Below, in pieces: positions 40,623 to 42,656 of a DNA stretch of 64,000 nt. The notes beneath the pieces were generated by a model. The model was not told the origin of the DNA. It did not search any database and was given only the letters and a program-made list of their open reading frames with translations. Source of the DNA: Adineta vaga (Eukaryota; Animalia; Rotifera). Location of the stretch: positions 3,596,001 to 3,660,000 of the forward strand of contig CP075492.1 in the NCBI GenBank assembly GCA_021613535.1, given 5' to 3'. Position 1 is the first letter of the stretch; every line of letters starts with the position of its first letter. The position numbers and the translations under genes were made by a program.

Positions 40623-42656
40623 TCAATGAATTTTATCAAATCGAACGATTCGATGATTAACACAATCTGAAACATAAAGATTTCCTTCAAAATCAAAGGA
40701 TAAACCAATGGGACGATTCAATTGATTTGATTCACTTCCTCTTCCGTTTCCACCAACAGCAATCGAACCTTCTTCATCTCCTTCACACCATCGCATTATT
40801 CGATGATTTTTCCAATCTGCCACATAGATCTGATTCCATTCATCAACAAACAATCCTACAGGTTGATTCAATTGATTGAGATTGTTTCCTTCACCATTTC
40901 CTCCAGCCACAACAACTCCTTCACGAGCATCTTTTCTCCATTTCATCACACGATGATTCAAACAATCTGAAACATAAAGAGATTGATCTTTATCAACAAA
41001 GATTCCTTGAGGACGACAGAGTGGATTTAATTGACTTCCTTCTCCATTTCCACCTGCAACTGATGTTCCTTCTTTCTTTTCATTAATGTTTTCTAACTTC
41101 CATTTTCTCACTTCATTCTTTTCCCAATCAGAAACATAAATAAATCCATGTTGATCCATTGTTAAACCAAAACAAGAAATATTTTGAATGAGAATTTGTT
41201 GTTGTTGATCTCGTGACCATTGCATCACTCGTCTGTTCTCTCCATCAGCAATGATGATTGAATGATTTTTTTGATCAACAATCACATCTAATGGATTATT
41301 CAATTGATCTATTCTCTCTCCATGTCCATTTCCACCTGCAATGATTTGTCCTTGTTTTCCATCACATTTCCATTTAACAATACGATGATTCGCAAGATCA
41401 GCAATAAAAATGGTTTTGTTTTCATCAACAAAGATTCCTTGAGGATAGGAGAGTTGATTTAATTGCCTTCCATGTCCATTTCCTCCCGCAACAATTATTC
41501 CATTTTGTTGAAATTTCGTTTCTAAACAAAGAAAAAAATCAATAAAAAAACTAAAATCTTTTCATTTTTCTCACAATTTAAATAACTTTCCAATATTTTT
41601 TGTTCATTTAGTGTTCTATAAAAGATTTGCATAACAATATGAATATGTAAGTGAACATTAACATATCTATTTTCTCTCTTTACTTAATTCTTCATTATCT
41701 TAAAAATGTCTAATTGAAGTAAAAGTCAGAAATGAAATGTTTATGATTGTAAATATGATAAAATAAAACAAAGAAGAAAAAGACATTTGATTATCTAAGA
41801 AACGAAATTGTGAAAAGAATGAAAGATTTATCTTAATTAAATTGATAAGGACAAATGTTAAAGGATTAGCAATTAGTTTTAAACATTGAATCAAACAAAA
41901 AAGACAAAATTAATCTTCTTAAAAAAGACGCTTCTCAGTTATTTATCTTCTATGATCACGCAGTATCGAAGTTTCTCTTAATCATTCGCATAAAGAACAT
42001 AAAACTACATTGTATTTGACGGTGTATTAATTTGACTTGTCTTTTTGTTTTTAATTAGAAAATTGAGATGTTGAGACATGGGTTTAAAATCAGTTTTTCA
42101 TTTCAATCAAACAAGAATTCAAAACTTTCGACTTACCCTTTCTTGAAATAACTGAAATTTCTTTAATATAACCTTGACGATGTTTTTGAATTGATATATT
42201 TGATGGGTTGTTCAGTTGTTCGCTCATTTTCCTAAGTTTCTCTTTTAAATCATTTAAATCAATCTCATTAAATTCATTTTCTCGTTGAATTTCTTTGATT
42301 TGTTTACTTAATTCGTTTAAGTTTTGTTCGGTGTCTTCAAAAGATGTTTTATAGTGTTCAACAACACTTTGTCGACATTTTTCAGCTGTTTGTTGAATAA
42401 TTTGAATTGAATTTGTTTCCCATTGATCAATTTGTTTGATCAATGAATGATTTATTGGATTTTGTTTTTGATCGTTTATCGTATGTCTAAATTGATCATA
42501 ATCATTGATAATCGAATGTAATTCCTCATTTAATACTTGATAATGTTCACTCCAGTCGGTTTGACAAAATTCCTTTAAACAACCTTTACAAAGAGTTGTA
42601 ATTTTTTTATATTTCAGACATTTGAAACATTGTGTTGTGTTGTTTGCCGTGGCCAT
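40623..42656 (-). CDS. B-box-like + coiled coil + NHL, copy E; exons 42656-42137 and 41521-40623
   Basis: Phase-1 donor AGA AAG G|gtaagt, acceptor tttag|AA ACG AAA TTT, open frame. Confidence 0.88.

What the first reader, a model, noticed from the sequence alone, without database searches (positions are those of the whole stretch)
40993..41045. Blade-to-blade sequence transfer: blade 4 of copy E carries a blade-1 segment
Seen: other copies have GNQRNQLNSPTFIFV (or FNYPTHIFV) in blade 4, but copy E has GSQLNPLCRPQGIFV. Its DNA, aattaaatccactctgtcgtcctcaaggaatctttgtt (minus strand), matches blade 1 of copy C, aattaaatcaactctatcgtcctcaaggaatctttgtt (about 23718-23755), at 36 of 38 nt, and the flanks revert to blade-4 sequence. 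Inference: short-tract ectopic gene conversion between non-equivalent repeats, which moves a variable loop to a new position and creates a new binding face.
Basis: partly seen in the sequence, partly recalled or inferred. Interest (0 to 1): 0.8.

Follow-up and report, generated by a model that had tools for sequence, protein, structure and literature searches.

The report
Blade-1 loop copied into blade 4
In one gene of a large, fast-diversifying rotifer (Adineta vaga) NHL-propeller family, a 27-60 base stretch encoding the variable surface loop of blade 1 has replaced the matching stretch of blade 4; this is a clear but apparently one-off case of DNA copying between non-equivalent repeats, a process already known from fungal WD40 recognition genes.

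Summary
The window is Adineta vaga chromosome 3 and holds six copies of a Cys-rich/helical/NHL-propeller family that has at least 40 copies in the genome. In copy E (I4U23_011709), the 42-nt blade-4 loop core matches blade 1 of copy C at 39/42. It matches 29 blade-1 cores at a mean of 83%, but 28 other blade-4 cores at only 55-69%. Both flanks are blade-4 type (91% and 89%). At sites where C blade 1 differs from the blade-4 consensus, E carries the donor base at 11/11 inside the tract and 1/37 outside (Fisher p = 5e-10). The blade-4 signature (Pro-x-Phe/Tyr) holds in 107/119 homologues from other bdelloids, so E's Pro-x-Gly is derived, not ancestral. Genome-wide, C blade 1 is the only sequence within 2 mismatches of the tract core, and both junctions are unique.

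Best reading: an out-of-register short-patch conversion or template switch, bounded by 9- and 12-nt identities. E is the only one of 145 blade cores in the wrong class, and hypervariable codons show no excess cross-blade sharing, so this is a single event, not a programme. Any effect on binding is untested. Other follow-ups in this scan already noted the family's hypervariable face elsewhere in this genome.

The parts
40623..42656 (-). Copy E gene (Adineta vaga I4U23_011709, 472 aa). Exon 1 is 42656-42137 (Cys/His-rich N-terminus plus helical region), the intron is 42136-41522, and exon 2 is 41521-40623 (six-bladed NHL propeller).
   Evidence: The ORFs and translation agree exactly with the database protein P0001. 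The Pfam NHL hit scores 110 bits. The AlphaFold model has pLDDT 93.8 and 24 strands.
41004..41035 (-). Minimal blade-1-type tract inside blade 4 of E. It encodes S162 to G172 of the NHL exon: the D-to-A loop and the first residue of strand A.
   Evidence: All blade-1-specific sites lie here. E carries the copy C blade-1 state at 11/11 informative sites.
40992..41051 (-). Maximal tract (60 nt), bounded by the nearest blade-4-specific sites at 41052 and 40991.
   Evidence: Site-by-site state pattern and coordinates.
41043..41051 (-). 5' border: a 9-nt stretch identical in blade 1 and blade 4. It is a candidate entry microhomology.
   Evidence: Consensus comparison of 29 blade-1 and 28 blade-4 segments.
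40992..41003 (-). 3' border: a 12-nt stretch identical in blade 1 and blade 4. It is a candidate exit microhomology.
23716..23755 (+). Blade-1 loop of copy C, the nearest sequence to the tract in the whole genome and the most likely donor lineage. It lies 17 kb away in inverted orientation.
   Evidence: It has 2 mismatches in 40; three other blade-1 loops have 3 mismatches. It is the only other genomic match to the 24-nt core at <=2 mismatches.
41427..41486 (-). E's own blade-1 loop, an alternative intragenic donor that fits less well.
   Evidence: It matches the tract core at 36/42. At informative sites inside the tract it gives 10 donor-state and 3 other, against 11 and 0 for copy C.
41086..42016 (-). 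Block of E (most of the intron plus blades 1-3) that is nearly identical to the chr1 paralogue L023, with 3 differences in 931 nt. It marks a recent in-register interchromosomal conversion and ends 35-50 nt upstream of the tract.
39580..40133 (-). Second near-identical block shared with the chr1 segment (4 differences in 554 nt), downstream of E.

Best explanation
Copy E is one member of a large A. vaga family of NHL-propeller genes. In this family the framework is kept nearly identical between copies, while about 20 loop codons on one face of the propeller are hypervariable. At some point a repair or replication intermediate in blade 4 of E copied 27-60 nt from the structurally equivalent stretch of a blade 1. 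The most likely source is blade 1 of the neighbouring copy C, 17 kb away. Copying appears to have entered and left through short stretches that blade 1 and blade 4 share (9 nt on the 5' side, 12 nt on the 3' side). The result is the same length and in frame. The loop before strand A of blade 4 now carries blade-1 residues: the family-specific blade-4 Pro-x-Phe has become the canonical Pro-x-Gly, and the hypervariable residues are those of copy C blade 1 (Arg and Gln identical, Tyr now Cys). What is shown: the tract's blade-1 origin, its limits, its uniqueness and its derived state. What is inferred: the mechanism (microhomology-guided template switch or short-patch ectopic conversion), the donor identity, and any change in what the propeller binds.
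For: The tract core is 39/42 identical to C blade 1, averages 83% to 29 blade-1 cores, and is 55-69% identical to 28 blade-4 cores. The flanks are blade-4 type at 91% and 89%. E carries the donor state at 11/11 informative sites inside the tract and 1/37 outside, Fisher p = 5e-10. In a tree of the 60-nt tract, the other 28 blade-4 sequences form a clade (support 0.999) that excludes E, which sits among blade-1 sequences. In the flank tree, E is nested inside the blade-4 clade. The state is derived: blade 4 has Phe/Tyr at the Gly position in 107/119 homologues from A. steineri, A. ricciae and Rotaria, and blade 1 has Gly in 109/119. No other A. vaga paralogue has Gly there. Both junctions are unique in the 100.8-Mb assembly. 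C blade 1 is the single nearest sequence. The tract is not an exact copy of any locus, since it carries a private Gln-to-Pro change, and the reading frame is intact; both points argue against a mis-join or a polishing artefact. Ectopic conversion is demonstrably active at this locus: there is a 931-nt block with 3 differences to a chr1 paralogue, flanked by 10-14% divergence, and the best-matching paralogue keeps changing along blades 4-6. High levels of gene conversion and an NHL expansion in A. vaga are stated in PMC3846280.
Against: No exact donor exists; the best has 2-3 mismatches. The event is therefore either not very recent, or the repair was error-prone, or the donor has since changed. 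Blade 1 and blade 4 flanks are only 59-73% identical, which is poor substrate for classical homologous conversion. The structure model is less confident in this loop in E (pLDDT 78-82) than in copy C (94-97). E also has a private Gln-to-Pro at a near-invariant loop position. The graft may therefore be neutral or mildly damaging rather than a useful new surface.
Confidence: 0.8

Rival explanations
1. Assembly or polishing artefact: reads from a blade 1 were mis-placed on blade 4 of E in this highly repetitive family, producing a chimeric consensus.
For: The family has at least 40 near-identical copies, so mis-mapping is conceivable. No reads could be examined.
Against: The tract is identical to no other locus; the best match has 2 mismatches in 40, and there is a private base at 41023 seen in no blade 1 or blade 4. 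The sequence flanking blade 1 and blade 4 differs by 27-41%, so reads would not map across. The frame and length are preserved, and the gene model is intact.
Confidence: 0.06
2. Same kind of event, different donor: the tract came from E's own blade 1 (intragenic, 435 nt upstream) or from another paralogue's blade 1, not from copy C.
For: A chr5 copy (L015) ties with C at 39/42 on the codon-aligned core. The differences lie mainly in hypervariable codons, which change fast. E's blades 1-3 were recently overwritten by conversion with the chr1 copy, so E's original blade 1 is unknown.
Against: C is the only sequence within 2 mismatches of the 24-nt core and of the 40-mer. C gives an unbroken run of 11 donor-state sites, against runs of 6 for L015 and for E's own blade 1. 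C is also the physically nearest of the candidates other than E itself.
Confidence: 0.3
3. Independent point mutations under selection restored a canonical NHL motif (Leu...Pro-x-Gly) in blade 4; the resemblance to blade 1 is convergence.
For: The new residues match the general NHL consensus. TTA, GGA and CAA are common codons in this AT-rich genome.
Against: It would need 14 changes within 42 nt, including six consecutive bases, and 11 of them give exactly the base of C blade 1 (binomial p = 7e-4 even at one in three). Other blade-4 cores differ from their consensus by 1-10 sites and carry at most 4 blade-1 states. The hypervariable residues, which no motif constrains, also match C.
Confidence: 0.02
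4. E retains an ancestral blade-4 type that all other copies lost.
For: None beyond the canonical look of the motif.
Against: The Pro-x-Phe/Tyr form of blade 4 is shared by A. vaga paralogues near and far and by A. steineri, A. ricciae and Rotaria. The E flanks are typical of the youngest A. vaga subfamily.
Confidence: 0.01

Closest known systems
Podospora anserina HNWD genes (het-e, het-d, het-r): WD40-propeller repeats with shuffling between repeats (PMC2873952, PMC1805685)
   Same: Both are beta-propeller recognition-type domains in a multigene family. Both have a conserved framework with a few hypervariable codons on the top-face loops, and exchange within and between paralogues. The paper documents a short conversion between non-equivalent repeats: het-R mutant r4 has an 88-bp stretch of repeat 2 replaced by the sequence of repeat 4.
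   Different: HNWD repeats within one gene are nearly identical, so out-of-register exchange and changes in repeat number are frequent. Here the blades of one gene are only about 60-70% identical, all copies keep six blades, and the cross-blade event is 1 in 145. The fold type also differs (NHL, not WD40), as does the organism (an animal, not a fungus).
In-register ectopic gene conversion among bdelloid paralogues and alleles (stated for A. vaga in PMC3846280, citing the genome paper)
   Same: Non-reciprocal copying between dispersed copies. Direct examples at this locus are the 931-nt and 554-nt near-identical blocks shared between chr3 and chr1.
   Different: Those tracts are long, in register, and lie between sequences at least 90% identical. 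The finding is 27-60 nt long, three blades out of register, and lies between sequences 59-73% identical outside the tract.
Lamprey VLR assembly and LRR cassette exchange in plant NLR genes (from general knowledge, not tested here)
   Same: Short homology-guided copying of repeat modules that re-positions variable ligand-contact residues in a repeat scaffold.
   Different: VLR assembly is a programmed somatic process with dedicated deaminases and cassette arrays. Nothing here suggests a programme: this is one germline event with no cassette arrays.
NHL domains of TRIM71/LIN-41, Brat, Thin and TRIM2/3, and the designed Pizza propellers
   Same: Same fold by sequence (E = 7e-35 to 5e-7 against solved chains). 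The model is a six-bladed propeller.
   Different: The rotifer proteins have no RING or B-box detectable by Pfam. They belong to a lineage-specific expansion with a hypervariable face.

Membership tests
NHL-repeat six-bladed beta-propeller (Pfam PF01436) | NHL repeat profile matches above the curated cut-off | tested here: met
   110.3 bits against a cut-off of 20, with 4-6 repeat stretches.
NHL-repeat six-bladed beta-propeller (Pfam PF01436) | Six blades of four antiparallel strands | tested here: met
   The AlphaFold model has pLDDT 93.8, pTM 0.91 and 24 strands in six groups of four. The copy C control gives the same result.
NHL-repeat six-bladed beta-propeller (Pfam PF01436) | Sequence similarity to solved NHL domains | tested here: met
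   Pizza, TRIM71, Thin, TRIM2/3, PknD and Brat chains, E = 7e-35 to 5e-7.
TRIM-NHL proteins | RING and B-box zinc fingers N-terminal to the NHL domain | tested here: not met
   The N-terminal 188 aa and the first 60 aa give no RING or B-box Pfam hit, even at E <= 5. A Cys/His-rich motif is visible by eye, but it is not assigned to any family.
Ectopic (non-allelic) short-tract conversion / template-switch event | Donor-type states in one contiguous tract, with recipient-type states on both sides | tested here: met
   11/11 inside against 1/37 outside; an unbroken run of 11. The tract and flank trees disagree.
Ectopic (non-allelic) short-tract conversion / template-switch event | A plausible donor sequence exists in the same genome | tested here: met
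   Copy C blade 1, with 2 mismatches in 40, is the unique nearest sequence.
Ectopic (non-allelic) short-tract conversion / template-switch event | Non-reciprocal, with no change of length or repeat number | tested here: met
   The loop has the same length and E keeps six blades. C blade 1 keeps the blade-1 type.
Ectopic (non-allelic) short-tract conversion / template-switch event | The junction is present in the organism's DNA (reads or an independent assembly) | not testable with these tools
The metagenome junction scan was empty. No second assembly was available.
HNWD-like repeat-shuffling recognition genes | Hypervariable codons confined to top-face loops of a conserved propeller framework | tested here: met
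   20 codons have at least 7 residues among 26 copies. All sit in the D-A and B-C loops (plus the blade-3 equivalent). Diversity at codon positions 1-2 is 0.60 there, against 0.03 in the framework and 0.057 at silent fourfold sites.
HNWD-like repeat-shuffling recognition genes | Repeats within a gene nearly identical, with frequent out-of-register exchange and changes in repeat number | tested here: not met
   Blade classes are 51-68% identical in the loop core. 144 of 145 cores fall in their own class. All copies have six blades. Hypervariable codon triplets show no excess cross-blade sharing (7 observed, 8.1 expected).

The most novel reading that the evidence does not exclude
Cross-blade grafting of variable loops is a recurrent, selected route of diversification in the bdelloid hypervariable NHL family. 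It would be a germline counterpart of cassette shuffling in lamprey VLRs or fungal HNWD genes, and E would be the first visible case. A related possibility is that the tract, the cluster of E-private substitutions beside it and the end of the 931-nt conversion block record one complex, error-prone multi-template repair of a single break.
Probability: 0.07. Interest if true: 0.75.

Novelty: new member of a known kind. Interest (0 to 1): 0.4.

Why it matters
This is a clean natural example of a specificity loop being moved to a different position on a propeller surface by a few dozen bases of out-of-register copying. The two repeats involved are only about 60-70% identical. It shows that in a genome known for pervasive gene conversion, conversion does more than homogenise a receptor-like family: it can occasionally create a surface arrangement that point mutation would not reach. 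It also provides a natural loop graft whose stability and binding could be compared with its un-grafted neighbours. Its weight is limited because it is a single event, its function is unknown, and the same kind of exchange has been shown experimentally in fungal WD40 recognition genes.

Tried and rejected
2. An exact scan of JGI metagenome contigs for the 3' junction found 0 hits.
3. Ancestral-state rival: rejected with 119 homologues and about 42 A. vaga paralogues.
4. A hidden better donor: pattern searches of the tract at up to 2-3 mismatches found only blade-1 loops, with C nearest.
5. Other chimeric blades: a class-assignment scan of 145 blade cores found only E's blade 4. Junction patterns are unique. 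The hits to the 5' junction pattern on chr4, chr1 and chr6 are distant subfamilies whose blade 4 uses the same Leu codon but keeps Pro-x-Phe/Tyr/Ala.
6. Cryptic micro-transfers of hypervariable codons between blades: no excess over shuffles. A first run used wrong codon offsets and is discarded.
7. B-box or TRIM membership of the N-terminus: no Pfam support.
8. Literature on bdelloid NHL families: only a passing mention was found.
9. Dating the event by the chr1 partner: not possible. The partner's blade 4 is itself nearly identical to that of its chr1 neighbour, so it has probably been overwritten.

Full report
**What the window is.** The window is AT-rich (about 29% GC). It lies at G000:C3:3596001-3660000 of a 100.8-Mb assembly in six contigs. 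The protein encoded at the finding is 100% identical to 'hypothetical protein I4U23_011709 [Adineta vaga]', 472 aa. The organism is therefore the bdelloid rotifer Adineta vaga.

tblastn with copy C finds six family members in the window:
- A: about 5842-6966, + strand
- B: 17452-15301, - strand
- C: 22844-24562, + strand
- D: about 28870-29787, + strand
- E: 42656-40623, - strand
- F: 49803-47572, - strand

Copy E has two exons, 42656-42137 and 41521-40623, separated by a 615-nt intron. The second exon is an NHL domain: Pfam PF01436 scores 110 bits against a cut-off of 20, and it resembles solved NHL propellers such as Pizza, TRIM71, Thin, TRIM2/3 and Brat. The AlphaFold model is a confident six-bladed propeller with pLDDT 93.8, pTM 0.91 and 24 strands. 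The N-terminal exon has a Cys/His-rich motif and a helical region. It gives no RING or B-box Pfam hit, so I do not file the family under TRIM-NHL.

An alignment of the six NHL exons shows that E departs from all the others in one short stretch of blade 4 and is ordinary on both sides of it. I fetched 29 paralogues from across the genome and cut every gene into blades in register. The results for E's blade 4:
- The 42-nt loop core (window 41035-40994, minus strand) is 39/42 identical to blade 1 of copy C and of a chr5 copy.
- It averages 83% identity to the 29 blade-1 cores, but only 55-69% to the other 28 blade-4 cores.
- The 39 nt upstream and 72 nt downstream are 91% and 89% identical to blade 4, against 73% and 59% to blade 1.
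- Ordinary blade-1 versus blade-4 cores average 68% identity and never exceed 34/42.

There are 48 sites where C blade 1 differs from the blade-4 consensus. E has the C base at all 11 inside the tract and at 1 of 37 outside. This gives Fisher p = 5e-10, and the unbroken run of 11 has a permutation p <= 1e-5. In a tree of the 60-nt tract, the other 28 blade-4 sequences form a clade (support 0.999) that excludes E, which sits among blade-1 sequences. In the tree of the flanks, E is nested within blade 4. The tract is at least 41035-41004 and at most 41051-40992.

**It is derived, not ancestral.** All 28 close paralogues and about 12 more distant A. vaga copies have Pro-x-Phe at the start of strand A of blade 4, or rarely His, Tyr, Cys, Ala or Leu. 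None has Gly. Among 119 homologues from A. steineri, A. ricciae and Rotaria:
- Blade 4 has Phe or Tyr at this position in 107, and Gly in one distant metagenomic sequence.
- Blade 1 has Gly in 109.

The blade-4 signature therefore predates the genus, and E's Pro-Gln-Gly is a replacement.

**Donor and uniqueness.**
- Searching the whole assembly for the 40-mer at up to 3 mismatches returns E itself, C blade 1 (2 mismatches) and three other blade-1 loops (3 mismatches).
- For the 24-nt core at up to 2 mismatches, only E and C blade 1 match.
- Patterns spanning either junction are unique to E. The extra hits to the 5' pattern are distant subfamilies whose blade 4 happens to use the same Leu codon but keeps the blade-4 signature.

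C lies 17 kb away in inverted orientation. C is the best donor candidate, giving a run of 11 donor-state sites against 6 for the chr5 copy and for E's own blade 1. No donor is identical, however. E differs from C by Asn/Ser (a state found in other blade 1s), by Tyr to Cys in a hypervariable codon, and by a Gln-to-Pro change at 41023 that no blade 1 or blade 4 shares.

A scan of metagenome contigs for the junction found nothing. The indirect arguments against a chimeric assembly are:
- The tract is not an exact copy of any locus.
- Blade 1 and blade 4 flanks are too different for reads to be mis-placed.
- Length and reading frame are preserved.

I put the artefact reading at about 6%.

**Mechanism (inferred).** The tract is bordered by the only two stretches in this region where blade 1 and blade 4 are identical: 9 nt at 41051-41043 and 12 nt at 41003-40992. 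Beyond these borders the two blades are only 59-73% identical, which is poor substrate for a classical heteroduplex. I therefore favour a microhomology-guided template switch during repair or replication, with short-patch ectopic conversion as the alternative. The two leave the same footprint, and the sequence cannot separate them.

Ectopic copying is clearly active at this locus:
- Window 37501-47391 is collinear with chr1:13598420-13609606 at 93-96% identity.
- Inside that segment, E and its chr1 partner differ at only 3 positions across 42016-41086 (931 nt: most of the intron plus blades 1-3, hypervariable codons included).
- They differ at only 4 positions across 40133-39580.
- The stretches between these blocks differ by 10-14%.
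- Along blades 4-6 of E, the best-matching paralogue changes every few dozen bases.

High levels of gene conversion and an expansion of NHL genes in A. vaga are stated in PMC3846280.

**Where the tract sits in the protein.** In the model, residues 170-175 (Pro-Gln-Gly-Ile-Phe-Val) form strand A of blade 4. Residues 157-169 form the loop from strand D of the previous blade. Across 26 close copies, 20 codons have seven or more different residues. They are the two codons before and the one after the loop proline, and two codons in the turn between strands B and C, in each blade. Nucleotide diversity at their first two codon positions is 0.60, against 0.03 in framework codons and 0.057 at silent fourfold sites.

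By the topology of a four-stranded blade, the D-A and B-C loops lie on the same face. In solved NHL-RNA complexes (Brat, TRIM71) that face is the binding surface; this last point is from general knowledge, and only the relationship to those chains was tested here. The tract therefore replaced the blade-4 copies of three hypervariable surface residues and one family-specific framework residue (Phe to Gly). In that literal sense a variable loop has moved to a new position.

Whether this makes a useful new surface is unknown. The model's confidence in this loop is 78-82 in E, against 94-97 for the same loop in copy C modelled with the same alignment. E also has Pro at a loop position that is Gln in 111/119 blade 4s and 114/119 blade 1s.

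**One-off or mechanism?**
- Of 145 blade cores (29 genes, five alignable blades each), only E's blade 4 falls into the wrong class.
- No other A. vaga copy and essentially no homologue in other bdelloids shows the swapped signature.
- Identical hypervariable codon triplets are shared between different blades no more often than in shuffles: 7 observed against 8.1 +/- 3.3 expected.

I conclude that this is a rare accident of a conversion-prone family, not a regular diversification route.

**Unexplained detail.** E has four private replacements at otherwise conserved positions: N148K, L153S, N162S and Q166P. All lie in residues 148-166, in or just upstream of the tract. Eight of E's nine private nucleotides in the 888-nt exon lie in 41076-41004. 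Five of those eight are simply the blade-1 states. The remaining three point changes still cluster within 54 nt, between the end of the 931-nt block and the tract. This could be the trace of a single error-prone, multi-template repair. It could also reflect later compensation, or merely the low constraint of the blade 3-4 linker, since the chr1 partner also has private changes there. I could not decide between these.

**Comparison with what is known.** The closest precedent is the Podospora anserina HNWD family, a set of WD40 propellers with four hypervariable top-face positions per repeat. There, spontaneous mutants include an 88-bp stretch of repeat 2 replaced by the sequence of repeat 4, which the authors interpret as a short gene conversion between repeats (PMC2873952; see also PMC1805685).

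The rotifer case works the same way but fails the defining HNWD features of near-identical repeats and unstable repeat number. The blade classes here are 51-68% identical in the core, and every copy has six blades. I rate it a new member of a known kind, in a new fold and a new phylum. Two earlier follow-ups in this scan described the family's hypervariable face on other parts of this genome. My counts agree with them.

**Verdict.** A blade-1 origin for the tract is very likely. The mechanism and donor are reasonably inferred. The functional claim is untested. Read-level confirmation is still needed. Interest is moderate (0.4).

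Noticed in passing
window 37501-47391; L050/L053 (G000:C1:13598420-13609606): About 10 kb around copy E is collinear with a chr1 segment at 93-96% identity. Within it, two blocks are almost identical: 42016-41086 (3 differences in 931 nt) and 40133-39580 (4 in 554). This is patchy, recent interchromosomal conversion that includes an entire intron.
   Followed up: partly
NHL exons of all copies, e.g. window 23660-24559 (+) and 40626-41519 (-): Twenty loop codons are hypervariable (7-12 residues among 26 copies). Diversity at codon positions 1-2 is 0.60 there, against 0.03 in the framework. 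Even third positions of these codons are far more diverse (0.42) than silent fourfold sites of the framework (0.057). Differences between copies often replace a whole codon, with no change in the surrounding 30-40 nt.
   Followed up: partly
window 41076, 41062, 41023 (minus strand): Three E-private point substitutions (N148K, L153S, Q166P) cluster within 54 nt, between the end of the long conversion block and the blade-1 tract. Only one other private base occurs in the remaining ~815 nt of the exon. This may be a trace of error-prone repair, or just a weakly constrained linker.
   Followed up: partly
window 47572-48460 (-), copy F: Copy F has a 1-nt deletion between blades 5 and 6 (alignment). 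Its NHL exon translates with stops and splits into two frames in tblastn. It is likely a pseudogene or a sequencing indel.
   Followed up: no
L045 (G000:C4:1623100-1626400): A paralogue on chr4 has an in-frame TGA inside the blade-4 loop. It is probably a pseudogene.
   Followed up: no
window 6240-6290 (+), copy A: Copy A carries a 42-nt in-frame insertion between blades 2 and 3 that the other five copies lack. Copies A and D gave no hit to the N-terminal exon of copy C.
   Followed up: no
window 21570-22157 (-): An ORF with reverse-transcriptase-like motifs lies just upstream of copy C in a locally GC-richer stretch (37% against about 28%). It is probably a fragment of a non-LTR retrotransposon.
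   Followed up: no
L023 and L016 (G000:C1:13601783 and 13610124): Blade 4 of E's chr1 partner is nearly identical, hypervariable codons included, to blade 4 of its chr1 neighbour. This is an ordinary in-register conversion, and it erases the partner's value for dating the event in E.
   Followed up: no
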